DNA of 64,000 nucleotides from Chrysemys picta bellii (Eukaryota): contig NC_088797.1 of the NCBI RefSeq assembly GCF_011386835.1, forward strand, positions 116,188,001 to 116,252,000. The letters run 5' to 3'. Shown one piece after another: positions 13,026 to 55,400 of the stretch; the stretch's first letter is position 1, and every line of letters begins with the position of its first letter. Below the pieces are notes generated by a model. The model made no database searches. It was not told the origin of the DNA and saw only the letters and a list, made by a program, of their open reading frames with translations. A program made the position numbers and the translations under genes.

Positions 13026-15894
13026 TTTAATTTTTATAATGTCATAATCTGAAGGCTAGGCACATTCTTTCCCAACTGAAAAATAACTTTTGCATAAAAT
13101 AAAAGTAATCTTTATTGCCCTTCACCAGTTTACAGTACACACACATGCACAGTAATACATTTGGCATCATGTAATGTTTTGTTTGCTTGTGTGGCTATAA
13201 CTTGTAAGCAGCAGCTGCGTCTAAGATTAACTGTTGGTCAGACATAAATTTAGGCAGAGAAATTACAGCAATAATTACAGCCTTTTATTGGTGATAGAAT
13301 GAGCTTCTAAAAAGAACTGGATCACAACTCATAATAAGCATTCCTCTAAGATCTAATTCCTATACATTCTGATAAATAGAAGGCCAACTGGCAATACCAC
13401 TGTCTGGTAATTCCCAACAATGCTACATATTCTACTTCCTTTCCTCAAAATTTGAAACACTCTTACTGTCATCACCCAATTCACCCTATGAAAACCTTCA
13501 ATATTCTACTATTTTTGGGGTAAATTTGCTATATAACAATCAGATAAAACTACAATTTATATTTAAAGGAACTCCATCAACCTGTATATCTAATTTTTTT
13601 AACTGAATATAGTTATTCACTATATTTATAAGTAACACCTACAATTATTAAAAGTGAAAGAAGCCGGCAACAAAAAGAAGCCCCCCCCCCCCCCCCAATT
13701 TGTTTACTCTGTGCATTTGACTCTATTCTGTGTAACACCATTTCCACTGCTTTGTTGATGGCCAATTGAGCTTCCTGTCTCATGTACTAACATGATGACA
13801 ATCTATTTCACCCTTCAGGGAAGGCTCAGCTGCATGCTCTTTTCCTGGCTCTCCAAATCTATGTTTACCAGTATCAACAGCAAACAAACTGAGGAGATGG
13901 TATGCAGGCATGTGCACAAAACAGAAGAACAACAAAAGACTGAATATATTGAGTGCTGTTGCTCTGCCTTATTTTTTAATAAGACCCTGATAAATATCTT
14001 CTTGGTATATAAAGAAAATATAATTCTGTGCACTTTATTTAAGCCATCGCTTCAGTCAGGCACATAAGTATGTACTTAAATTAAAGAATGTGAGTAAATC
14101 CTTCCCTACTCAGTAAATTAATTAAGCACATAATTAACTTCAAGAATAAATCATCCTATTGAAGTCAATGGGACTTCAGCACACACTTAAACTTAAGTAC
14201 ATACTTTTGTGCTCGGATGAATTGATGTCTAGGCAGTATTCTATCAGAAGTATAGTTTGTTTGTTTTAAATTAGTCAACTTCAGGACTTCAAGTTAACAG
14301 TATCCTTATAACGAAAACAAGAAGGTAACATTTATTGCAACAGTCCAACAATGTTTATTATACTTGCATATTCAGATAAAAAAGTAATACCATAGGGTAG
14401 TAATACAATAAATCCAATTAAACAAAATCTGGCAACAACCCTGATTTTAAAGTCATGTAATGCAGTGTAACTGTAGAGGGGAAAATGTACATATATTTCA
14501 TATCCATTTCAAATACATTTGTCACAATATACAGTTATTTTCAGAATAATTATAATAATTTTTCTTTCAAATTAAGCATATTTTAACAAAATTGTCCTTT
14601 GGCTCCTTCCCCCAGTTACCAAGGTCTCTTTGATAGTGTGTCTGTTACCTTGTTTTAGAAAGCAGACACTTTAAAACTTTTTCCTAGAAAAATATAGTTC
14701 CACCTCTATAACTTGGCTAACATTCTTTATCCACTGATCATTTCAGATTACCTGACACAACTAAATTTTAATAAAAGTACTAAGATTTGAACACCATATT
14801 TTGCTGTACTGCGCAGTGATAAAAATTATCACCAAAAAACCTATTCATCAAATAAAACAACTTTTTATATATGAGTAATAAAATACAACTCCTAAGTCAT
14901 CAGGACTAGCTTAATATTCAGATTGCTACAGTGAATTTAATCACTTTACTGCAAACCTTAACTCATTTTTTGTTTTAAATTCAACAACTGTTGGCTTGAT
15001 TATTGTTCTGAAACATAGGTCATATTATATTATTTGGTATTTTTGTTATAAGCCCACAATGCAGAAAGGACAGAACATATTTATAGGTCAGTAGACACAA
15101 TAACTTCTCATGAAGTGTGCTAGATACAAATGGACAATTAGCTTCAGAAGCTAATAAAGAGAGACTATTAAACTAATCCATCTGAATTTGCAACCATTGC
15201 TTGTTAGTTATTTAATTGACAATATGGCTCAACAGTTCAGCTGCTGAAATTCACAAAAGGATAAGTCTGTTAATAGCAAATTTAATGTAAAAGCAAAGTC
15301 ATGTACAAATCTACTTTCCACATCACATTTCAAACCAAGAACATCAGGTCAAGCCAGCCAGTTTGTAAAAGTTGTGCTAATCACAGATGCTTCTCTGGGT
15401 CTGGGTTTTTAGGGAGTATATCAGTACAATACTACGGCATCCTCCAGAAGAAACACATGACCACTTCACTTGATAGCTATGGAAAGTAGGAAAAGGCTAC
15501 CGCATTCTGGGTGAATGCAGCAAAAGATGCAAGCCCAAGAACTACATCTGGATACCCTGTATGTGGGAACAATGTCAGGAAAATCAAGAGCAGTAGTTGA
15601 GACTCTGAAGAGAAGAAGAATGTACATTGTATACAAGAACCAAAATGGAAGGGGTTGAAATCCACAAACATCAGGGATGGTTACAAGATAATGTATGATG
15701 GTTCAGTAGCAAGGAGGAATGGGGTAAAAATAATCATAGCAGAAATATTAAAGAATAAGGTAGCAGACATCCAAAGGAATAGTGGCTCATGAAAGTTAGA
15801 ATAGCACTGAGCAGAGAACATATATTTAATGTTATATGCACATACATGCCGCAGGTTGGCTATATGATTGAGTAGGAGGAGGAATACAAGATGG

Positions 15895-18258
15895 GAGTGA
15901 AGTGCAGTGGTTCCAATGTTAGTAGGAATCTGTGTTTGCTACGTATGATACACTGACTTGCAGTGCCTATTGCTTTCCTGGGTTAAGGTATCTTTTACTT
16001 TATGCAATAATAAAGAATGTTTTCAAAGAAAATAATCCATTTATTGAAAAGAAAATGCATTTATTGAAAAGAAACACAACTGCTTGGGAAACAGAAAGTG
16101 CAAGGGGGTGGGGTGGGGAATGATACAATCACAGATTTGCATATGTTCTGTTACCATACTCAGCCTTCCTGTCTGGAGTGCTGTGCAATGAGTGCTGCAC
16201 TTCAGGATGGCTATACTGCATGGTGATGGGGTTGAGTGCAGTGGGTAAGGGACGCAGTTTTCAGGGCTGGGGGGTGAAACTACAGCTGTTGGAGGCAGCT
16301 GGTGGCGATAAGAACCCGGATGTTGGGGAAAGTGGGTTGGAGGTGACATGGGGCCACAAGGGAAAGAGTTTCGGGACAAGGGCTGCAGGGGGGTGCAGGC
16401 ACGGTAGTGCTCCGCCTGCATGGCTACAAGTGCCTGGATCAAGTCCGCTTGGTGCTCCATGATGCTTATCAGCTGCTCCGTGCTTTGGTGCCGGCGATCC
16501 GCATTTTGCTGGCAGACCCTCCTTTCACTCTCCCACCACTCCTGCACTTTTCGATTTTCATTAAGGGAGTGAGTGCTTCATGACTTCATGCAGCATGTCC
16601 TCTTTGCTTCTAAGTGGCCTCTTCCTGATTCTTTGCAGCCTCTCGGCTGGTGAAAACACAGACGGCCGAGATCTCAAGGTTGCATCTGTAAAGGCAAAAT
16701 GCAACATTAACAGAGGCGGCATTGTTCACACCAGACAGAGCAATGATTCCCCTGTACTTAAGGAGGGCACGCAGTCTACACAATAGCATAATTTGCCCGT
16801 CCCAAAGTGAGCACACACAACCCACGGGAGCCACAAAATGGTGAGTAAGCACAGGGTCAGGGGGGACTGATTCTTTCATGGCTGTACTGTCCTTTCGGTT
16901 TCTGTGCCTTCGGGAGAACCAACAGCTGCAAGGGGCCCCTATACTGAACACTGTCCCCACATTTTCCACAGGAGTTCGTCCTGGAAGATATCTCACTGCT
17001 GAGGGTGACCTGGGAAGCAAGGGAGGGTCTTCTAATGCAGCTTCCACCCTGGCCCATATGCAGCTTGCCTGTGTGCAGCAATGGTCCCACTGCCCTTCAC
17101 AGCACAGTGGCGTAGACACATTAGCCTGACTGGGACAAGGACCACAGCAGCTCTCCCAAGAAACCTGCGCAAGCGCATTGCCCAAGTTCTCACTGAGACC
17201 TTTGAAGAGATCACTGAGGCCGATTACCGCGATGTGAGAGAGCACATCAATGCCCTATTCCGTATCTAGGCATGCATGCAACCCTAACCCTCCTTGCCCC
17301 AAGAACCCACACCGAATAACTTCCTTCCCAAAATAAAAGCCACTTACCGGGAACCTCCTCTGGTGTTTGTCCTTCCCCAACCACTGGCCGCTGCAACTGG
17401 CTACCTTGCTCCTGGCTTGAGAATAGGTCCTGGCTTCATGCATCTAGGGATGCCGGAGTGTCTTCCTCCTCCTCAGCACCCTCGCTCCCACTTTGCTCCT
17501 CCTCCTGCCTTGTTGGACTGGGCTCTGAAGTGTTCATGGTGGTACTCAGAGTGGAGGTGGATCACCCCCAAGTATCGTGTCCAGCATTTTGTAAAAATGG
17601 CAGGTTGCAGGAGCAGCACCAGAGCACCTGTTTGCCTCGCGGGCGTTGCGGTAAGCATTCCACAGCTCCTTCACTTTAACCCTGTACTGCAGAGCGTCCT
17701 GGTGATGGCCCCTTTCCATCATGTCCCTTGATATCTGCCTGAAGGTATCTTAATTCCTACAGCTGGAGCGCAGCTGCAACTGGACAGCTTCCTCCCCCCA
17801 AACACTGATGAGGTTCAGCACCTTGACATTGCTCCATACTCGGGATCCCCTGGCGTGTGGAGGCATGGTCACCTGGAAAGATTCGCTGAGAGCACTCCAC
17901 ACCTGAATGAGCAAACGGGAAGGGGATTTTCAAAATTCCCTGAGAATTTAAAGGGCGGGTCTGATGGTTGGTCACCTGAGGGCAGGGCAGTAGAGTTCAA
18001 TGATGACCAGAGTGGCTAGAACATGCATTGTGGGACACTTCTGGAGGCCAATCAGAGCGCATTAACAGACCATGGCGTCCACACTGGTGCTGCGGCGTTC
18101 CAGCCGGGGCGCATCAAACATTATTCCACTCGCCGAGATGAAGTACCAGGATCACTCTAGCCAGAATGCTCTATGTGCCTTGCAAGCGTGGACGGGTTGT
18201 GAGTTAGAGCGCACTGGGCTGCTTTAATGCGCTCTAACTCGCAAGTGTAGCCATGTCC
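15895..18258. mobile_element. Harbinger copy 1 (right half only; transposase and left TIR deleted)
   Basis: Colinear with 50.1-52.8 kb of copy 2. Right TIR caagtgtagccatgtcc ends at 18258. Confidence 0.92.
16129..17866 (-). pseudogene. Harbinger Myb/SANT-like DNA-binding protein gene, spliced (exons 17866-17348 and 16685-16129)
   Basis: Donor CCCG|gtaagt and acceptor ttttgcctttacag|AT join ...GQTPEEVP-D-ATLRSRPSV... in frame. Stops and frameshifts are present. Confidence 0.75.
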
Positions 18259-19961
18259 TGAGATTTAAGGATGAGGTACTGCAGCCACTGCACAATGACC
18301 AAACCAACTACGATGATACCAATGAGATTTGGTGAAAAACATCCAATTTTACAGAAAGTGCAAAGGAAGCCTCTTGCCAAACAAAAGGAGATAAATTTCA
18401 TGGCAAGAAGACATGATGGTCCAGCAATGTGCAGGAGCAGTAAAGAAGGAGGAAAGGTTTAAGCCATGGCAGAAAATAAAAATGGTGCAAAAGTTATGAG
18501 GAATACAAGCTTTAAAGAAAACAGCAAAAAGAACAGTTGTGGAAGTTCAGAGGCAGGCATTTAAAACTTTATACGCAGGACTACTAAAGAAAGAAAGGGA
18601 AAAACAAAATGTAGATTAGACAAGATTAGGCAAAGAAGCATAGAGGACTTGGTAGCAATGAAGTGTGTCAAAGAAGAAAATGGAAGACATTGAACTCATT
18701 AGGAAGTAACAGTGATTTTATGAGAAACTGTTCAATGAAAAGAATGCAAAGAAACACTTGAGCGAAGTATGCACAAGCAATAACCACACAAGATCTATCA
18801 CCATGGTGGAGACTCAGATAGCACTAAAAATGATGAAATATGGGAAGGCAGAGGTCCATGGTACCAAATGAGGTATTTAGAGTATTAGGCCATGAGGGTA
18901 TGGTGGTGATGAACTTTTTCAACTTAATTTTATCTACTGGAAAAATACCCAACAAGCAGAGGAAGAGCACACTGGTCCCTATCTTCAAAAATAAAGGAGA
19001 TTGCTAGAATGTGGTAATATTCAGTGAGTCACATGATGAAATGGTTGGAAAGAAGACTTTGGATAGAGCTGGAACATCAAGTAAGCGACGACCAATTTGG
19101 GTTTATGCCAGGAAGAGCAACAATGGATGCGGTGTTTGCAGCCCAAATACTGCAGGAGAAGTACAGAGAAATGCACGGAATTACATTTAGTGTTTCTGGG
19201 TTTAGAAAAGGCTTATGATGGAGTTTCTACAGAGTTGTTATGGTGGTGCCTGCAGTCCGGCAATCTGCTGGAGACATTTGTTCAGAATATTATGTACGAG
19301 GGTAGCACAATGGTAGTAAGATGTAGCAGCTTCAGTGAGTCATTCACTGTGGGGGTAGGTCTAAATCAAGGATCACCCTTAAGCCCATTGCTATTTGGAC
19401 TGTAATGGACATCTTGGCACAGGAGATTAGGGAAGAGCATGCTTTTTGCCAATGACATTAAATTATGCCATGAAGATAAATATAAATTGGAAATGGACCT
19501 AGAACTATGGAAGGCTGCATTAGAAGAAAATGGCTTATGACCAACTGACAAGACAGAATATATGCAATACTTCACTGATAGGAAGCATGAGAAGCCAGTA
19601 AAACTAGATGGCCTACAGTTAACATTTGTGCAACAACTTAAATACCTCAGTTCAGTGTTGAGCTTCGATAAGAATGTGGATGCGGATGTTAGGAGCCACA
19701 CGAAGAGTGCTTGGTATAAATGGAGGGAGGTGACAGGAATTCTCTGTGATAAGAATATGCCAAATAAACTAAAGAACAAAGTGTATAAGATGATGATTAC
19801 GCGAGCCATGATGTATGTATTGGAATGCTGGCCAATGAGGAAGAGAGAACCACCACTACTTCACAGTACCACAATTAGAATGCTCAGGTGGATGCTGGCT
19901 AAGACAGGAGTTGATAGGCTACACAATGAAATGGCAGGAGCCATATGCAGGTTGCCCCCAT

Positions 19962-20217
19962 CACAGGCGTCTGCTTTTTCCTTTCCTTGGGGGTGCTCAA
20001 ACCCTGCTCAGCCCCAGGACCCGCACCTACTCCACCCCTTCCCCAAGGCCCTCCACTATTCCCGCCTCCGATCCGTCACTCCCCCACCTCTTCCCCCTGT
20101 ACCCCAGTGCCTCCTACATGCCACAGGACCACCGGTGGGTGGGAGGCACTGGGGGTGAGGGGGATGGCTGCCAGTGGGTGCTAAGCACCCACTAATTTTT
20201 TTATGTGGGTGCTCCAG
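19962..20217. mobile_element. GC-rich MITE fragment inside the RTE 3' region
   Basis: Interrupts the RTE between ...gcccccat and aaaaagatgagggagtatcgactgagatgg. Contains gggtgctaagcaccc; right end missing. Confidence 0.5.
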
Positions 20218-43551: not shown

Positions 43552-45168
43552 TAGGGCTGTCAAGCGATTAAAAAAATTAGTCGTGATTAATCGCACTATT
43601 AAACAATAGAATACCATTTAAATATTTTAGATGTTTTCTACATTTTCAAATAATTAATTTCAATTACAACAAAGAATACAAAGTGTACAGTGCTCACTTT
43701 ATATTTAATTTTGATTGCAAATATATGCACTGTAAAAAAATTAAAAAAAAATATTTTTCAATTCATCTCATATAAATACCATGGTGCAATCTCTTTATCA
43801 TGAAAGTTGAACTTACAAATGTAGAATTATGTACCAAAAAAACCTGCATTCAAAAATAAAACAATGTAAAACTTTAGAGCCTAAAAGTCCACTCAGTCCT
43901 ACCTCTTGTTCAGCCAATCACTCAGACAAACAAGGTTGGTTACAATTTGCAGAAAATAATGCTGCCTGCTTCTTGTTTATAATGTCACCTAAAAGTGAAA
44001 ACAGGCGTTCACATGGCACTGTTGTAGCTAATGTTGCAAGATATTTACGTGCCACATGCACTAAAGATTCATTTGTCCCTTCGTGCTTCAACCACCATTC
44101 CACAGGACATGCTTCCATGCTGATGACGGGTTCTGCTCGATAACAACCCAAAGCGGTGCAGACTGATGCATCATCATCTGAGTCAGATGCCACCAACAAA
44201 AGGTTGATTTTCTTTTTTGGTGGTTCAGGTTCTGTAGTTTCTGCATCGGATTGATGCTCTTTTAAGACTTCTGAAAATATGCTCCACACCTAGTCCCTCT
44301 CAGATTTTGAAAGGCACTTCAGATTCTTAAACCTTGGGTCGAGTGCTGTAGCTATCTTTACAAATCTCACATTGGTACCTTCTTCGCGTTTTGTCAAATC
44401 TGCAGGGAAAGTGTTCTTAAAACAAACAGCAACATATGCTGGATCATCATCCAAGACTGCTATAACATAAAATATATGGCAGAATGTGGGTAAAACAGAG
44501 CAGGGGACATACAATTCTCCCCCAAGAGTTCAGTCACAAATTTAATTGATGCATTGTTTTTTTAAACGAGCATCATCAGCATGGAAGCATCTGGAATGGT
44601 GGCTGAAGCATGAAGGGGCATATGATTGTTTAGCTATATCTGGCACCTAAATACCTCGCAATGCTGGCTACAAACATGCCATGCAAATGCCTGTTCTCAC
44701 TTTCTGGTGACACTGTAAATAAGAAGAGGACAGTATTATCGCCTGTAAATGTAAACAAACCTGTTTGTCTTAGCGATTGGCTGAACAAGAAGTAGGACTG
44801 AGTGGACTTGTAGGTTCTGAAGTTTGACATTGTTTCATTTTTGAGTGCAGTCAGGTAACAAAAAAATCCTACATTTGTAAGTTGCACTTTCAAGACAAAG
44901 AGATTGCACTACAGTACTTGTATGAGGTGAATTTAAAAATACGATTTCTTCTGTTTATCACTTTTACAGTGCAAATATTTGTAATCAATTACAACAATTT
45001 GATCTCAATTACAACACAGAATATGAGATATATATGAAAATGTAGAAAAACATCCAAAATATTTAATAAATTTCAATTGGTATTCTCTTGTTTAACAGTG
45101 CGATTAAAACTGCGATTAATTGTTATAAATTTTTTTTTTGAGTTAACTGCAATTAATTGACAGCCCTA
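43552..45168. mobile_element. Fold-back hAT element built from two transposase 3' ends
   Basis: TIRs tagggctgtcaa / ttgacagcccta, flanked by aatataa on both sides. hAT dimerisation domain on the minus strand (WWLKHE..VARKYLATLATTVPCERLFSLLGDIINKK) and again on the plus strand at about 44640-44730 (LAPKYLAMLATNMPCKCLFSLSGDTVNKKR). Confidence 0.88.
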
Positions 45169-46308
45169 AATATAACAGGAGAGACTGAAGAGACCTTTAA
45201 ATGTACTCTTATAATTGTTGTCCCTATTCTTTAGTGATTTGAAATATGAATGAAATTGTGCATGAACACTTATTTTCTGATTACCATTAAAGATTTCATG
45301 AGAAACTGAAATAAAAAGGAGATGTTTAAAAGGTTTTGTTAAAAGTTACAAATAAATTTAAATAAGTGAATTGCTGAAACAGTCATTCAAGGGATTATTA
45401 TTCCTTCTAATGAAGGAAAGTCTGAAATATATTGAGTACTTACAAAAGTTTTTGTTTCCTTAAACAAGTTTTCCCATGTTTTATACAGTATTTCAAATTC
45501 AGGCAAAAGCTGATAAACTAATCACCTGGAGCTCAGAAAAGGAGTATTTAGATTATTTTCCTGGTCAGAAAACTATAGCAATGAACATGATGTAAAAATT
45601 TAGTTGGATAGTTACTGAAAGAAACAGTCTTTGAGACAAAGGAGTTCAGATAACTGGCAAAAGGGCAGTGTTGGCGATTCTCCCTCTGAATTACCTGGTG
45701 CTCAAATAAAAATAGAAAAGATTAATTAACCCATCTTGCTCTCACATTTCCAGGTGCCATACATCTTTGACTGTAAGAAGAGATTAACAGGTGGCATGAT
45801 GTTATTATCTGACAGTTAAGATAAAACCTGTTCAACAAGTTGAAAAATCAGTTCATGTGGAAAATTAATGGCTATGCTTGAAAAGAAGGCATACAGCAGC
45901 ATCCTCTCAGGAGGAATCATTTTGTTTGTTCCATATCTTCAGGGCTGTTTTTCTTGTCAGATGTGGAGGAAACAAAGCTTTCTACAAGTTTGATAAAACT
46001 TTTCTATGGAAAAAAATCTATTATGAAAGCAGTTATTTGCTTTAGTTTAAACAATATTGAATAAGAATCTCATACACTGAAAGTTTAATCTTTTGGTATT
46101 GAATATTTTATTGTTGTGACACTGACAGATGGTCAACTTGGGTATGACCCATAACAACAAAAGGCACTGAAATGTAATCAAGACAATGTACTTGTATTTG
46201 AATTTCAAAGAGAAGTCGTAAATCAGGAATCATTAGCTCGTATTTGTAGTAATAGAAATCAAGGGTAGATGCTAAGTGTATTGGTCTATGTTTACCCATC
46301 TCTTGTTA

Positions 46309-46519
46309 AAAGAACAGGAGTACTTGTGGCACCTTAGAGACTAACAAATTTATTAGAGCATAAGCTTTCGTGGACTACAGCCCATTTCTTTGGATGCATA
46401 TAATTGGGCTGTAGTCCACGAAAGCTTATGCTCTAATAAATTTGTTAGTCTCTAAGGTGCCACAAGTACTCCTGTTCTTTTTGCGGATACAGACTAACAC
46501 GGCTGCTACTCTGAAACCT
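46309..46519. mobile_element. Penelope inverted-pLTR insertion, 211 bp, 11-bp TSD
   Basis: TSD atctcttgtta at 46298-46308 and 46520-46530. Perfect 76-bp inverted arms at 46309-46384 and 46405-46480. Confidence 0.92.
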
Positions 46520-48470: not shown

Positions 48471-48959
48471 AGAACTAAATTATTCAAATAATATAAAAAA
48501 GCTCAAGATTTGAAAAAATAAATATGACTAGAGATCATGAAAAAGAAATCTAAGGTGGATTGGTTTGCCATCAGCTGAGCTTGCTCTAAGGGTATGGCTA
48601 CACTTGCAGATGTAGAGCGCTTTGAGTTAAACCCGCCTTCGGAGAGCGCAGTAGGGAAAGCGCTGAAGTCTGTCCACACTGATAGCTGCAAGCACACTGG
48701 CGTGGCCACATTTGCGGCACTTGCAGTGGCACTGGGAGCGGTGCATTACGGGCGGCTATCCCACAGAGCACCTCTTCCCATTCTGGTGCTGTGACTTGTG
48801 GAAAGGGGTCAGGGGAGGCGGGGCATTCTGGGTCCTGTCCCAACGCTCCGTAATGCATCGGTTCGCAACCCAGCAATCCCTCTGCTTCCGTCCACATTTG
48901 GCACCATCTTTCAACGTTTTTTGTGCTGCACGCTCTGTCTTCCCTTTCGGTCTGTGGGA

Positions 48960-50084
48960 ATGGAGCCTGAACTGCTGAGGAATATGCTGACGAGTCCCAC
49001 CAGCATGTCACGTTTGGCACTCGAGTTACTCCTTAAGATCCAAACTGACAGTGAGGACTCCGCCGATATCGACTCGAGTAGTGCATACAACACAAGATTG
49101 CTTGTGGCATTCACGGATATGCTTACCACCGTGGAACGCCACTTTTGGGCTCGGGAAACAAGCACTGAGTGGTGGGATCACATCGTCATGCAAGTTTGAG
49201 ATGACGAGCAGTGGCTGCAGAACTTTCAGCTATTGCAATCTGGAAGCTGGCAACTCCAAACAGCTACTGATCGATCGTTAACAAGTTTGGAGTCGGGAAG
49301 TCAACCATTGGAATCATGTTGATGCAAGTTTGCAGGGCCATTAATCGCATCCTGCTCAGAAGAACCATGACTCTGGATAACGTGCATGATATTGTGGCTG
49401 GCTTTGCACAAATGGGTTTCCCAAACTGCGGAGGGGCGATAGATGGCATGCATATTCCAATTCTGGCACCAGCCCACCTAGCCTCCGAGTACATTAATCG
49501 GAAGGGCTATTTCTCTATGGTTCTCCAGGCGCTTGTGGATCACCGTGGGCCTTTCATTGACATTAACGCAGGCTGGCCCGGAAAGGTGCATGTCCACACA
49601 TCTTTCGGAACACTGGCCTGTTCAGGAAGCTGCAAGCAGGGACTTTGTTCCCAGACCAGAAGATCACTGTAGGTGAAGTCGAAATGCCCATTGTGATCCT
49701 TGGAGACCCCACTTACCCCCGCTCACGAAACCCTACACAGGGAGCCTTGACAGCAGCAAGGAGCGGTTCAAGAACAGGCTGAGCCGGTGCAGAATGACTG
49801 TGGAGTGTGCTTTTGGCCGTTTAAAGGGCCACTGGCACTCTCTGTATGGGAAGCTAGACCTGGCCAATGACAGCATCCCCGCGGTTATATCCGCGTGCTG
49901 TACCCTCCATAACATTTGTGAAGGGAAGGGTGAAAGATTCACGGAGGCATGGACCTCGGAGGTTCAACACCTGGAGGCTGAATTTGAACAGCCAGAGAGC
50001 AGGGCTATTAGAGGGGCCCAGCACAGGGCTGCAAGGATTAAGGATGCCTTGAGGGAGCAATTTGAGGCTGAAAGCCACCAGTAA
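48960..50084 (+). pseudogene. Harbinger (HARBI1-like) DDE transposase, disrupted
   Basis: FWARETSTEWW, GFPNCGGAIDGMHIPI, NRKGYFSMVLQALVDHRG, GDP, RMTVECAFGRLKG..ACCTLHNICE. Stops, frameshifts and an apparent internal deletion near 49225. Confidence 0.92.
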
Positions 50085-50307
50085 TGTCTGGTGCCCTGCA
50101 TGGAAGTGAACTGCAGTGGTTCCAATGTTAGTAGGAATCTGTTTGCTATGCTGACTTGCAGTGCCTGTTGCTTTCCTGGGCTAAGGTATCTTTTACTTTG
50201 TGCAATAAAATAGAATATTTTCAAAGCCAGAAAATTCATTTATTGAAAAGAAACACAACTGCTTGGGAAACAGAAAGTGCAAGGGGGTGGGGTGGGGAAT
50301 GGTACAA

Positions 50308-52406
50308 TCACAGATTTGCATATAACCTGTTATCATACTCAGCCTTCCGGTCTGGAGTGCTGTGCAATGAGTGCTACACTTCAGGATGGCTATACTGCAT
50401 GGTGATTGGGGTTGAATGCAGTGGGTAAGGGTCGAAGTTTTCAGGGCTCGGTGGTGAAGCTACAGCTGTTGGAGGCAGCTGGTGGTGATAAGAACCCAGA
50501 TGTTGGTGAAAGTGGGTTGGAGGTGACATGGGGGCACAAGAGTTTTGGAACAAGGGCTGCGGGGCGGGGGGCTGGCGGGCATAGTAGTGCTCTGCCTGCG
50601 TGGCTGCAAGCACCTGGCTCGAGTACGCTTGGCACTCCATGATGCTTATCAGCCGATCTGTGCTTTGCTGCCAAAGCTCAGCGTTTTTGTGCCGGCCATC
50701 CACATTCTGCTAGTGAATCCTCCTTTCACTCTCCCTCCACACCTGCGCTTTAGATTCTCGTTAAGTGACTGCTGCATTACTTCATACAACATGTCTTCTT
50801 TGCTTCTAGGTGGCCTCTTCCTGATTCTTTGCAGTCTCTCGGCTGGTGAAAACACGGACGGCGGAGATCTCAAGGTTGCATCTGTAAAGGCAAAATGCAA
50901 CACTTAACAGAGACAGCATTGTTCACACCAGACAGAGTAATGATTCCCCTGTACTTAAGGAGGGCAAGCACAGTCTACACCAGGGGTCGACAACGTTCAG
51001 CACGCGGCTCGCCAGGGTAAGCACCCTGGCGGGCCGGGCCAGTTTTATTTACCTGCTGACGCGGCAGGTTCGGCCGATCGCGGCCCTCACTGGCCGCGTT
51101 TCGCCGTCCCGGGCCAATGGGGGCTGCGAGAAGCCGCGGCCAGCACATCGCTCGCCTGTGCCGCTTCTCGCCGCCCCCATTGGCCCGGGATGGCAAACCA
51201 CGGCCAGTGGGGGCTGCGATCGGCCGAACCTGCCGCGTCAGCAGGTAAATAAAACTGGCCCGGCCCGCCAGGGTGCTTACCCTGGCGAGCCATGTGCCGA
51301 ATGTTGCCGACCCCTGGTCTACACAATAGCATAATTTGCCCGTCTCAAAGCGAGCGCATGTAACCCACGGGAGCCACAAAATGGTGAGTAAGCACAGGGT
51401 CAAGGGGGGACTAATTCTTTCATGGCAGTACTGTCCTCTGGGTTTCTGTGCCTTGGGGAGAACCAACAGCTGCAGGGGGCCCCTATACTGAACACTGTCC
51501 CCACATTTTCCACAGGATTCATCCTGTTGAGGGTGACCTGGGAAGCAAGGGAGGGTCTTCTACTACAATGCAGCTTCCGCCCTGGCCCATATGCAGCTTG
51601 CCTGTGTGCAACAATGGTCCCACTCCCCCTCACGGCACAGTAACGCGGACATGTTAACCTGACTGGAACAAGGACCACAATGGCTCTCCCAAGAAACCTG
51701 CGCAAGCGCATTGCCCAAGTTCTCGCTGAGACCTTTGAAGAGATCACTGAGGCCGATTACCACAATGTTAGAGAGCACATCAACACCCTATTCTGCATCT
51801 AGGCATGCATGCAGCCCTAACCCTCCTTGCCCCAAGAGCCCGCACCGAATAACTTCCTTCCCAAAATAAAAGCCATTTACCGGGAACCTCCTCTGGTGTT
51901 TGTCCTTCCCCAAGCACCGGCTGCCGCGACTGGGTACCTTACTCCTGGCTTGAGAATAGCTCCTGGCTTCATGCATCTAGGGATTTTGCCGTGTCTTCCT
52001 CCACCTCAGCACCGCACTCCTGCTTTGCTCCTCCTCCTCCTCCTGCCTTGTTGGACTGGGCTCTGAAGTGTCTATGGTGGTACTTGGAGTGGAGGTGGTA
52101 TCACGTATCAAGTATCAAGTCCAGCTCTTTGTAGAAACAGCAGGATGCAGGAGCAGCACTGGAACGGTGGTTTGCCTCACGGGCGTTGCGGTAGGCATTC
52201 CGCAGCTCCTTCACTCTAACCCTGTACTGCAGAGCGTCCCGATCATGGCCCCTTTCCATCATGTCCCTTGATATCTCCCCGAAGGTATCGTAATTCCTAC
52301 GGCTGGAGCACAGCTGAGACTGGACAGCTTCTTCCACCCAAACACTGATGAGGTCCAGCACCTCGCCATTGCTCCATACCTGGGATCGCCTGGCAAGTGG
52401 AGGCAT
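50308..52406 (-). pseudogene. Harbinger Myb/SANT protein gene, spliced (exons 52406-51881 and 50881-50308)
   Basis: WSNGEVLDLISVWVEEAVQSQLCSSRRNYDTFGEISRDMMERGHDRDALQYRVRVKELRNAY..CFYKELDLIL is a Myb/SANT-like domain. Donor and acceptor are homologous to copy 1. Confidence 0.85.
50981..51316. mobile_element. Young hAT-Charlie-type hairpin MITE, 336 bp
   Basis: TIRs caggggtcgacaac / gttgccgacccctg. Perfect TSD gtctacac at 50973-50980 and 51317-51324. The empty site is visible in Harbinger copy 1 at 16774-16781. Confidence 0.95.
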
Positions 52407-55400
52407 GGTCACCTGGAAAGATTCGCTGAGAGCACTCCACACCTGGATGAGCAAACAGGAAGGGGATTTTCAAAATTCCCTGAGAATTTTAAGGGTGGGT
52501 CTGATGGTTGGTCACCTGAGTCCAGGGCAGTAGAATTCAAACTGATGACCAGAGTGGCTAGAACAGGCATTGTGGGACACTCCTGGAGGCTGATCAGAGC
52601 GCATTAACAGACCAGGGCATCCACACTGGCGCTGCAGAGCTCCAGCGGGGGCACATCAAACATTATTCAACTCGCCGTGGTGGAGTACCAGGAGCGCTCT
52701 AGCCGCGGAGTCAGAGTGCTCTATGTGCCTTGCCAGCGTGGACGTGTGGTGAGTTAGAGCACACTGGGCTGCTTTAATGCACTCTATCTCACAAGTGTAG
52801 CCATGCCCTAAATTATACTCTGTTCAAACCAGCATCTATTTTATTCTGTGAGTATGTAAAGGAAGAATCAATCTTCAGTAAACAGAGATGTTCAATATTA
52901 GCATGAACTGTTGCCAGATATCAACTAGTTGGCAGAATGACAGTCCTTAGCTCTCTCTCTGGAGCCTGAATTTCTCCTGTCTGGCTATTGATAATGAAAT
53001 GACAGTGAGAGGAGGAGCCAAATTAAATAATAGCAACTGTATAGTTAAAGACTGTGTTAAAAAATCTTCAGTACCTCCATACATCCCCCAATATGATAAC
53101 TGAGAATTTTTGGAGAAATCTCCCTGTGGAAATTAAATTATACCATACTTAAAACTTGGGGACTGAAAATACACCAATTGGAATGGTATATATGCAGAAT
53201 TTAGTATTTGTCACTTAGTTTTGGAGCAAAGTGGAAATTCTTATAAAAGGGACTATTGAATCTTCTCAGAGTAATAGATGTCCCTTGACTAAGAAGAAAT
53301 AAGACACTGAATCTTTTCTCATGAGTATATGGGAAAAAAGGTCCAAGTGATAACGCTAGAAGGATGGAATTGATTATTCTGTTAGGGACTGATTATTTTC
53401 TTAAGAAAACATTCATGTTGGCATCCATGGAACACAAGATGATGATAATATCACTGCAGCCTATATGCTTCAAAGGTAAACGAACTCATCCAGGATACCT
53501 GTCTGCAGATTCCCAATAGACATTTACAGTCCCTCAGGCATGATGACTGCAACCTGATGTCTAATTTTAAATGCATCTGTGATCCAATTATTAGGTGTCA
53601 GATCTTTTCTGTTCTTGTCGACAGTACGCAAGCCTCACATTTAAAATATTTCTCTAGAAGTAGTAGTGATTACTAACTCTTTTTCGACCTTTTCACATAT
53701 AAAAAGGTATGACCGATCCTGTTGTCCACAAGTCATACTATACAACCTTTACATTGGTTGTCTTTTTAGAGTAAGAGCACAATTTGTATCTCAGACTTTA
53801 TACTATACGCCCATGTACCCTATTGTGCTGTTAAGGCAATTTTCTTGCTACATAATTTCAACCAATGGGATAAAGAACAAAAAAAACCATTTTGCAGACA
53901 GTACTTCAGTGCTGGAATGAAAGCAGGCTTCCCTAACAGAAGAAATGGAACGTATAGTGTAATATTGTGCCTAACTAAACCAAGTATTGTGAAGTAGTCA
54001 TGTTCTTAAATTAATTGGCCCTTTTCTTTTTAGTAGATACAATACCTGACATACTAGCAAATCTTTAAAAGTACACCTTCACAAGTGACTACATACATGT
54101 ATCAAGGGTGTTTACTGAAGACAAAATTTCCAATTAAAAGCCTCTATTTAACATGCATCCTCATTTTACAGATGTAGCAATAAAGGAATATACTATTGGT
54201 AATTCCGCTAGAATTGGATTATCTTTCAAAATATAAGACAGCTTTCAAAATCATGAACCCATGTAAATTGGCAATGGCTGGCACATTTTGGCAATAGTAG
54301 CCTTCTCTGATAGAATTCCCAGTTCTCTTTTCTCTCTCTAGAGGTACCTCTCCCTTGGCACCATAAATTTACCACAGGCCACCAAGCTATGAGTGAATAA
54401 GACAGCAGGGTGGGAACCACAATTGGCAATGCAGACTTATGCCTGCATAAGGAATATGTAATCTTTAGAGTGGCATTTTCAAAAGCACTCAATATTGCCC
54501 AAACACTGCTCCTACTGAAGTCTATGATAAAATATCCCATTGTCCCAGACATGGCAGAAAAAAGGCAAGACACCAGGAACTGTGGTTTAACAAAGTCATA
54601 ACTTCATTAACTTAACATCTGGGAAACTCTGGCAGTAATTCCTCCACTGCAGGTCAACATTCCTTCCATAATCCATACTCTCGGGGGGAGGGCAGCCCTG
54701 AGCCCCTCCTTCCCGCTCCAAACTTTTAACCTGGACTGGCACACTTTCTGGCACCACACTACTCTCTCTTTGTACAAAAGTTGAGGGTATAGGGAAATGG
54801 GGTTGTGGCCCCTCACTGTAGTAGACATTAGAAGCCCTAGCTTCACACACCCCTATCTTCTTTAAGGAATAACCTCCCCTATTCCTGATTGCAATTCTAG
54901 TTTATCAGAAATCCAGAACCCCCTATTAAGTGAGTGCCTACATTGGACATTTGCCAAGTTGCAACAACATGAACTCATTATGACCTAATTTACCCACTTG
55001 GTCCCTGGGCTGATAAGAGAAAGGCAAAAAAACCACCACCACCCAGGCCATCTGGCATTGAGGGGGAAATTCCTTCCTAGCTCCCAAAAAGGGCAAGTAA
55101 TGTGATGCCTACAGAGAGAGTCACAAACTCAGTGCTACTCTAATTTCCAAAGTGTGTATGAGTGTGCTGGGGACTGGGGTGCCCACAGACAGGCTTTGAT
55201 GCACCTTTATTTCTAGCCAGTCAGCCAAGGAGCCCACTGGTACACTCCCAAGCTCACAAAATCTTTGAAGGGGTCCATGGATTTTCTTTCTCCTATTGGC
55301 CCAAACAAAGTCTCTCCACCTTAGAGGTCTTTGATAAAGGTGCGGGGGAGGGGAGTGGGGAGAGAGACTATTAACTTTAGTGATGCAGAGTTAGGCCAAA

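What the first reader, a model, noticed from the sequence alone, without database searches (positions are those of the whole stretch)
16838..17269. Candidate third Harbinger gene: a spliced ~101-aa ORF antisense within the Myb-gene intron
SEEN: both Harbinger copies carry, on the + strand inside the Myb intron, cacaaaATG|gtgagt (A at -3, G at +4, consensus donor). A 131/132-nt intron follows, ending in a branch-like tactgaac and ttttccacag|G. The frame then runs to a shared TAG (copy 1: ATG 16838, intron 16841-16971, stop 17267-17269; copy 2: ATG 51381, intron 51384-51515, stop 51800-51802). Each copy is broken at different places. Copy 1 lacks 5 nt (ctaca). Copy 2 has a 1-nt loss, an in-frame 15-nt loss and TGG>TAA. 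Merging them gives one open frame: M|EFVLEDISLLRVTWEAREGLLLQCSFRPGPYAACLCAAMVPLPFTAQWRRHISLTGTRTTAALPRNLRKRIAQVLTETFEEITEADYRDVREHINALFRI*. The C-terminal third looks like an amphipathic helix. KNOWN: Harbingers normally encode a transposase and a Myb/SANT protein. INFERENCE: this family may encode a third small protein from an antisense, intron-nested gene. Caveats: only two dead copies are available, their substitutions look neutral or CpG-driven, and which allele of the 5-nt indel is ancestral is unresolved.
Basis: partly seen in the sequence, partly recalled or inferred. Interest (0 to 1): 0.75.

Follow-up and report, generated by a model that had tools for sequence, protein, structure and literature searches.

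The report
BEN-fold third gene in turtle Harbinger
The small frame hidden backwards inside the Myb-gene intron of these two dead turtle Harbinger transposons is a real, conserved coding exon for a ~100-residue BEN-fold protein, so this "two-gene" transposon lineage carries a third coding unit.

Summary
Every other copy I aligned has the 5 nt that copy 1 lacks, so that loss is private to copy 1.

The frame is not chance. A full-library phmmer search found 59 relatives (27 at E<=1e-10), down to 25-50% identity. AlphaFold gives pLDDT 95.5. The only strong structural matches are BEN domains (Z 6.5-8.8; next 4.3). The exon lies antisense in the Myb intron in three diverged Harbinger lineages. Between two subfamilies it is as conserved as the transposase and the Myb domain (82%; flanking intron 63-64%). 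dN/dS is 0.48 in frame and about 1.2 out of frame.

The transcript structure is unsettled:
- Against it: no RNA contig showed that junction, although the Myb intron junction was seen in the same runs.
- Public gene models join other upstream exons to the same acceptor (transposase 5' part, host exons).

Both window copies are dead relics.

The scan has already noted this feature on other DNA of the same genome. I found no paper describing it.

The parts
15891..18258 (.). Harbinger copy 1: a remnant lacking the transposase. It holds the Myb gene and the nested BEN unit; the right TIR ends at 18258.
   Evidence: Self-BLAST against copy 2 gives 84-88% identity. The right end reads ...GCAAGTGTAGCCATGTCC.
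16838..16840 (+). ATG at the 3' end of the upstream exon of the BEN unit (cacaaaATG|gtgagt). How far the 5' exon extends is unknown.
   Evidence: ATG|GTGAGT is also present in copy 2, L001, L010, L004b and L006.
16841..16971 (+). Proposed 131-nt intron of the BEN unit (GTGAGT ... tactgaac ... ttttccacag).
   Evidence: The donor and the branch/acceptor block are conserved in L006, where the intron interior no longer aligns. No RNA joint was seen.
16972..17269 (+). BEN-fold coding exon of copy 1. It is broken by a private 5-nt deletion after 17034. The open piece is 17036-17266 and the stop is 17267-17269.
17332..17337 (+). AATAAA, 63 nt after the BEN stop. It is the likely polyadenylation signal of a terminal exon (inference).
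   Evidence: The same signal is at 51865 in copy 2.
16686..17347 (-). Myb-gene intron (662 nt, GT..AG on the minus strand) that hosts the BEN unit.
   Evidence: RNA-contig joints 16685/6 -> 17348-53 in X15 and X16; none in X1 or X2.
17348..17866 (-). Myb exon 1 coding part (Myb_DNA-bind_4 domain plus acidic tail). It has an in-frame stop.
16129..16685 (-). Myb exon 2 coding part. It has frameshifts and stops.
48590..52808 (.). Harbinger copy 2, near full length. It has 18-nt TIRs (GGGTATGGCTACACTTGC and its reverse complement) and TAA target duplications at 48587-48589 and 52809-52811.
   Evidence: It aligns to the full-length copy in L002.
48960..50084 (+). Transposase gene of copy 2 (DDE_Tnp_4). 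It has frameshifts and runs convergent with the Myb gene.
51381..51802 (+). BEN unit of copy 2: ATG 51381-51383, intron 51384-51515, exon 51516-51802. It is broken by a 16-nt gap and by TGG>TAA.
51881..52469 (-). Myb exon 1 of copy 2 (Myb_DNA-bind_4, E 2e-15).
50973..51324 (.). Secondary hairpin insertion in the Myb intron of copy 2 (165-nt arms, 91% complementary). It is not part of the family.
   Evidence: It is absent from copy 1 and from L002.

Best explanation
This turtle Harbinger lineage carries a third coding unit besides its DDE transposase and its Myb/SANT-like gene. It is a ~300-nt 3'-terminal exon on the transposase strand, nested antisense in the Myb-gene intron, and it encodes a ~100-residue stand-alone BEN-fold domain.

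In the window's subfamily I think translation most likely starts at an ATG that is the last codon of a short upstream exon (ATG|GTGAGT). This exon is joined over a ~131-nt intron to the BEN exon, and the transcript ends at the AATAAA 63 nt after the stop.

By analogy with solved BEN domains, the protein most likely acts as a DNA-binding or partner-binding accessory or regulator of the element. Possible roles are recognising element or chromatin sites, or repressing transcription.

Shown: the domain is coding, constrained and BEN-folded; its position is conserved; the splice signals are conserved.
Inferred: the transcript structure and the function.

Both window copies are decayed relics and encode nothing now.
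For: Homology:
- The word search found intact 101-aa models in sea turtles.
- The locus L001 has the same ATG|GTGAGT...CCACAG|G structure, intact.
- Full-library phmmer gave 59 hits, 27 at E<=1e-10. Many cover residues 3-99 at 25-50% identity.
- The 41-sequence alignment has near-invariant G57, P65 and N67.

Fold:
- AlphaFold2 gives pLDDT 95.5 and pTM 0.85.
- In Foldseek only BEN domains exceed TM 0.5; BEND3 BEN4 has TM 0.69 and rmsd 2.6 over 90 columns.
- In the VIA wide search the top five are all BEN (BANP 8.8, BEND6 8.1, Bsg25A 7.0, NACC1 6.8, BEND3 6.5); the next hit is 4.3.
- Pfam BEN is the only family hit repeatedly: 6 of 41 members, all below threshold.

Conserved architecture: the exon lies antisense in the Myb intron in family 2 (L005, L009) and in L006.

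Constraint between L002 and the 73%-identical subfamily copy L004b:
- BEN exon 0.82 identity with 1 gap column.
- Transposase CDS 0.82 and Myb domain 0.82.
- Flanking intron 0.63-0.64, with many gaps.
- dN/dS 0.48 in frame and about 1.2 in the other two frames.

Start and splice signals:
- ATG|GTGAGT and CATTTTCCACAG are kept in window copies 1 and 2, L001, L010, L004b and L006.
- AATAAA follows the stop.
Against: - No RNA contig joint 16840->16972 is among the 15 joints listed, although the Myb intron joint was found in the same two RNA runs. RNA contigs run unspliced through the small intron. These are contigs from unknown tissues, and 11 further joints were hidden.
- Family 2 lacks the upstream ATG|GT and has an ATG inside the exon, so the start mechanism is not universal.
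- Public models join other exons to the acceptor: a far 5' exon, the transposase N-terminus, or host genes.
- The turtle protein itself has no Pfam BEN hit. Its pI is near neutral at 6.9, which is weak for a DNA binder.
- L001 and L010 were found through open-frame gene models, so they are an ascertained sample.
- An omega of 0.48 is only moderate and includes post-insertion decay.
Confidence: 0.6

Rival explanations
1. The BEN exon is real and constrained but is not a gene of its own. It is an alternative 3'-terminal exon of the transposase transcription unit. Transcripts from the transposase promoter splice from a 5' donor (in the UTR or early coding part) to the BEN acceptor. The product is either BEN alone or a fusion of the transposase N-terminus with BEN.
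For: - RefSeq isoforms in Malaclemys (P0168, P0131) read ...WWDRIVLQ|V-BEN.
- RefSeq model P0123 skips the whole transposase, going from a 5' exon 4.2 kb upstream to the acceptor.
- The window subfamily has the same Q|V (CAG|GTG) site, and the junction would be in frame (my reading).
- Family 2 has no ATG mini-exon.
- An earlier scan note (s1-314110) reached this reading.
Against: - ATG|GTGAGT sits at a fixed distance upstream of the acceptor in three subfamilies, including L006, where the rest of the small intron has diverged beyond alignment.
- The donor used in the Chelonia model P0116 (GAT|GTGACT) is absent from window copy 2.
- Whether RNA supports the public models is unknown.
- No loose end at 16972 was listed for the RNA runs.
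Confidence: 0.28
2. The BEN exon is a passenger. It was a host or other-element BEN exon picked up once by a Harbinger and carried along, with no role for the element.
For: Relatives in zebrafish and gecko have no transposase or Myb gene within 8 kb, so the domain also lives outside Harbingers.
Against: - It is kept open, free of indels and as conserved as the transposase and the Myb domain between subfamily founders.
- It keeps the same nested position in lineages whose Myb proteins are only about 50% identical.
- A functionless passenger should decay in the active lineage.
Confidence: 0.07
3. It is a chance open frame in neutrally decaying repeat copies, with no coding function. This is the null that the reader's own caveats allow.
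For: - Both window copies are broken.
- Differences between copies look neutral.
- An in-register minus-strand frame is also open for 214 codons in copy 1.
Against: - Protein-level homology to diverged families, down to 25% identity, with conserved motifs.
- A confident BEN fold.
- Constraint relative to the flanking intron.
- The minus-strand frame is closed in copy 2.
Confidence: 0.03
4. The conserved block is a cis-acting DNA or RNA element, for example a signal for Myb intron splicing or an enhancer, rather than a coding exon.
For: It lies inside an intron that is demonstrably spliced.
Against: - Conservation is at the amino-acid level while the nucleotides diverge.
- The omega pattern is frame-specific.
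- The 41 homologues fold as one domain.
Confidence: 0.02

Closest known systems
BEN domain (Pfam PF10523). Solved examples: BANP 7yuk, BEND6 7yul, BEND3 7w27/5jno, NACC1 8yzs, Drosophila Bsg25A/Elba 4x0g.
   Same: The fold matches: five helices with a short hairpin, about 90 aligned residues, Z 6.5-8.8 and TM up to 0.69. Some homologues give sub-threshold Pfam BEN hits, and UniProt names one 'BEN domain-containing'.
   Different: - Sequence identity to solved BENs is 6-18%.
- The turtle protein has no Pfam BEN hit at all.
- It is a bare ~100-residue domain with near-neutral pI.
- It is encoded by a transposon.
- DNA binding is untested.
Canonical PIF/Harbinger transposons (DDE_Tnp_4 transposase plus a Myb/SANT-like protein; TWA target duplication).
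   Same: The transposase, the Myb gene, the 18-nt TIRs and the TAA duplication are all present.
   Different: Surveys of the superfamily describe two ORFs only (PMC4482050; PMC9179366). Here a third conserved coding unit sits antisense in the Myb intron.
Host-transposase fusion genes formed by exon capture through alternative splicing (Cosby et al. 2021, cited from my own knowledge).
   Same: Public gene models join truncated host genes to this exon's acceptor: 6PF2K, a protein kinase, Ras/Rab, TEDC1 and an SLC6 transporter. In amphibians KRAB or KRAB-zinc-finger N-termini are joined to it.
   Different: The captured module is an accessory BEN exon, not the transposase's own DNA-binding domain. 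RNA support for these models was not checked.
Xenopus germ-plasm protein Xpat, named as the nearest named relative in earlier notes of this scan.
   Same: This is only a lead from earlier notes.
   Different: Not tested here; no Xpat sequence was available to me.

Membership tests
PIF/Harbinger DNA transposon | DDE_Tnp_4-type transposase | tested here: met
   Window 49271-49669 and 49677-50081 hit PF13359 at E 2e-8 and 4e-11, both above the cut-off. The gene is frameshifted.
PIF/Harbinger DNA transposon | Second ORF with a Myb/SANT-like domain | tested here: met
   PF13837 at E 2e-15 in copy 2 and 1e-6 in copy 1.
PIF/Harbinger DNA transposon | 3-bp TWA target-site duplication and terminal inverted repeats | tested here: met
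   Copy 2 has TAA on both sides and 18-nt TIRs. The left end of copy 1 is missing.
BEN domain (PF10523) | Match to the Pfam BEN profile above the gathering score | tested here: not met
   P0002 and the window pieces give no BEN hit. Six of 41 homologues hit below threshold; the best is 20.8 bits against a cut-off of 23.2.
BEN domain (PF10523) | BEN fold (helical bundle with a short hairpin) | tested here: met
   The model has pLDDT 95.5. The top five of 48,161 representative chains are all BEN, at Z 6.5-8.8; the next is 4.3. Foldseek TM is 0.5-0.69 for BENs only.
BEN domain (PF10523) | Sequence-specific DNA binding | not testable with these tools
   There is a conserved ALPRNLRKRI block, but the pI is 6.9. 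This needs SELEX, DAP-seq or EMSA.
   ATG|GTGAGT and the acceptor CATTTTCCACAG| are present in W_c1, W_c2, L001, L010, L004b and L006. They are lost only in decayed copies: L002 has ATC, and L004a has an insertion. The ATG|GT is absent from family 2.
   No such joint is among the 15 listed in two RNA runs, while the Myb intron joint is seen. The evidence is contigs only, and 11 joints were hidden.
   No start-site data were available; contigs cannot show transcript starts.

The most novel reading that the evidence does not exclude
The BEN exon, with its strong acceptor and its own polyadenylation signal, works as a built-in exon trap. Harbingers that land in host introns would then donate a ready-made BEN module. 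This would make the lineage a vehicle that has repeatedly seeded host BEN-domain fusion proteins in vertebrates: KRAB-BEN in amphibians and chimeric isoforms in turtles.
Probability: 0.2. Interest if true: 0.85.

Novelty: new variant of a known kind. Interest (0 to 1): 0.66.

Why it matters
Harbinger/PIF elements are the textbook two-gene DNA transposons, and two-gene thinking shapes how their domesticated descendants (HARBI1/NAIF1, the MSANTD genes) are read.

A conserved third BEN-fold unit adds three things:
- A new player to the transposition or regulation machinery of a vertebrate lineage.
- A testable candidate for how the element recognises DNA or controls itself.
- A concrete route by which BEN modules could enter host genes.

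It also shows that intron-nested antisense exons in repeats can be missed by ORF-based annotation. The two copies in this window are dead and matter only as witnesses.

Tried and rejected
- Direct Pfam and PDB sequence searches with the window pieces gave only noise: UNC45, YfcL, FliG. A profile search of PDB sequences gave a weak TFIIA-gamma match (E 0.03), which I treat as spurious because the fold search says otherwise.
- The 97-102-aa 'stand-alone' proteins P0126, P0127 and P0142 looked like spliced mRNAs. Their Logan contigs are unspliced, and the 'M' is a GTG or other alternative start from a prokaryote-style gene caller.
- The Chelonia model P0116 (transposase residues 1-39 joined to BEN) uses a GT that is absent from window copy 2. 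I take it as an ab initio artefact.
- The L. olivacea model P0006 takes its first exon from outside the element.
- I looked for a Harbinger context around the zebrafish and gecko relatives and found none within 8 kb.
- The 214-codon minus-strand frame through the intron in copy 1 is in antisense register with the BEN frame and closed in copy 2. It is a by-product.
- P0131 was not on record for locus retrieval.
- Literature: no paper in the library links the BEN domain to Harbinger.
The window's open pieces were searched by reference, and the public protein P0002 served as the intact representative.
- The N run at 31700-31833 was left alone.

Full report
**What is in the window.** The window is vertebrate DNA (GC 41%, CpG observed/expected 0.26). 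Every close protein match is to turtles. Earlier notes of the scan call it a painted-turtle genome; I did not verify that.

Two copies of one repeat are present: 15891-18258 and 48590-52808. They are 84-88% identical.
- Copy 2 is a near full-length Harbinger. It has 18-nt TIRs and TAA duplications on both sides.
- It carries a frameshifted DDE_Tnp_4 transposase on the plus strand at 48960-50084.
- It carries a convergent Myb_DNA-bind_4 gene on the minus strand.
- Copy 1 begins just after the position of the transposase stop, so it lacks that gene.
- Copy 2 also carries a secondary 352-nt hairpin insertion in the Myb intron.

**The observation.**
- ATG|gtgagt, a 131/132-nt intron, ttttccacag|G and a shared TAG.
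- A 5-nt loss in copy 1.
- A 15+1-nt loss and TGG>TAA in copy 2.

The host 'intron' is a true intron. Laying Logan contigs of two RNA runs (X15, X16) on 16450-17480 gave several joints that skip 16686-17347, with GT..AG on the minus strand. The two DNA-like runs (X1, X2) gave none.

**It is coding.**
- A word search with the 77-codon open piece found sea-turtle hypothetical proteins.
- Its locus L001 has the same ATG|GTGAGT...CCACAG|G structure, fully open.
- The full-library phmmer search with P0002 returned 59 hits, 27 at E<=1e-10. Many cover residues 3-99 at 25-50% identity.
- The hits include other turtle Harbinger lineages, gecko, amphibian KRAB proteins and fish proteins.
- An alignment of 41 domain segments shows a coherent motif: D-I-x-L-x-R, PGPYAA, and G-x-R-x-K-x-ALPRNL. 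G57, P65 and N67 are nearly invariant.

**It is a BEN fold.**
- AlphaFold2 on that alignment gave pLDDT 95.5 and pTM 0.85, with five helices and a short hairpin.
- In Foldseek only BEN domains exceed TM 0.5; the best is BEND3 BEN4 at TM 0.69.
- The aligner that does not rely on Foldseek ranked five BEN domains first among 48,161 chains, at Z 8.8-6.5. The next hit is at 4.3.
- Pfam's BEN profile is the only family hit repeatedly by the homologues, always below threshold. It is not hit at all by the turtle protein.
- I therefore call it a divergent BEN-fold domain. It is not a Pfam-defined member.

**It belongs to the element and is constrained.** The exon lies antisense in the Myb intron in three settings:
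- the window's subfamily;
- a second family whose Myb protein is about 55% identical (L005, L009);
- a third, more distant one (L006, BEN 46% identical).

Two full-length copies from subfamilies 73% identical overall (L002 and L004b) compare as follows:

| Segment | Identity | Gaps |
|---|---|---|
| BEN exon | 0.82 | one gap column |
| Transposase CDS | 0.82 | few |
| Myb domain | 0.82 | one gap column |
| Intron either side of the exon | 0.63-0.64 | many |

Nei-Gojobori dN/dS between the two open copies L001 and L004b is 0.48 in the BEN frame and about 1.2 in the other two frames.

In the DNA-like runs, depth at 80% likeness peaks over 16940-17080. This fits contigs of other subfamilies aligning only where the exon is conserved (my reading).

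**How it is expressed is the open question.**

- ATG|GTGAGT and the branch/acceptor block are retained in window copies 1 and 2, L001, L010, L004b and L006.
- In L006 the interior of the small intron can no longer be aligned.
- An AATAAA follows the stop by 63 nt.
- A pyrimidine tract plus AG is conserved about 30 nt upstream of the ATG, so the ATG may sit in a tiny internal exon. This is an untested idea.

Against it:
- No joint 16840->16972 is among the listed RNA joints, and RNA contigs read straight through.
- Family 2 has no upstream ATG|GT. It has ACCATG just inside the exon.
- Public models join other exons to the acceptor: a far upstream exon (RefSeq P0123), the transposase N-terminus (RefSeq P0168 and P0131), and truncated host genes.

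I put about 0.6 on the free-standing two-exon gene in this subfamily and about 0.3 on an alternative terminal exon of the transposase unit.

**Function.** Solved BEN domains are sequence-specific DNA binders or partner-binding modules. Dai et al. 2013 is cited in PMC11601247 for the DNA-binding role. The BEND3 BD1-PICH complex appears among the structural matches.

I infer an accessory or regulatory role in DNA or partner recognition for the element. The near-neutral pI of 6.9 is a caution against assuming DNA binding.

**Novelty.**
- The superfamily surveys in the library describe two ORFs only.
- No paper pairs the BEN domain with Harbinger.
- The scan itself has 19 earlier notes of the same feature elsewhere in this genome. 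I reached the BEN reading, before reading them.
- Those notes add two leads: Xpat as the nearest named relative, which I did not test, and splicing to the transposase start, which I tested partly.

**Limits.**
- The read evidence is from contigs, not raw reads.
- L001 and L010 were found through open-frame models.
- No consensus of many copies was built.
- The joined or merged window protein was deliberately not assembled or searched.

Noticed in passing
window 50973-51324: A hairpin insertion with two 165-nt arms, 91% complementary, 22 nt apart. It sits in the Myb intron of copy 2 and is absent from copy 1 and from L002. It looks like a MITE.
   Followed up: partly
window 16613-17254 (minus strand): A 214-codon open frame runs through the whole Myb intron in copy 1, in exact antisense register with the BEN frame. 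It is closed in copy 2. It is probably a by-product of the codon usage of the BEN frame.
   Followed up: partly
proteins P0124, P0133, P0134, P0137, P0141 (public gene models): Truncated host proteins are joined to the family-2 BEN exon at its acceptor: 6PF2K/His_Phos, TEDC1, a protein kinase, Ras/Rab and an SLC6 transporter. The exon behaves like a terminal-exon trap in gene models. RNA support is unknown.
   Followed up: partly
proteins P0156, P0162 (Pelodytes, Microcaecilia): Amphibian proteins combine a KRAB box (one also with C2H2 fingers) with this BEN-like domain at the C-terminus. They may be host fusion transcription factors.
   Followed up: no
window 16660-17150 in the read laying depth table: In the DNA-like runs, summed contig depth is 5-8 times higher over 16940-17080 than over the flanks. 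This may reflect cross-subfamily conservation of the BEN exon or a higher-copy derivative that shares this part.
   Followed up: no
window ~16806-16837; L006 ~400-434: A pyrimidine tract plus AG is conserved about 30 nt upstream of the ATG|GT in three subfamilies. The ATG may therefore lie in a ~30-nt internal micro-exon.
   Followed up: no
window 19024-20158 (plus strand): Reverse-transcriptase-like frames (FGFMPGRATMDAV...) just right of copy 1. This is an unrelated retroelement fragment.
   Followed up: no
window 43711-44126 / 44573-44988 and 46308-46481: An inverted pair of ~415-nt repeats (79% identity) and a 174-nt perfect-register palindrome (95%). They lie upstream of copy 2 and their nature is unexamined.
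   Followed up: no
L004 9619-11861: The Pangshura copy of the window's subfamily has its ATG/donor region replaced by a short palindromic insertion, and its acceptor is mutated (CCACCG). It is another independently decayed copy.
   Followed up: partly
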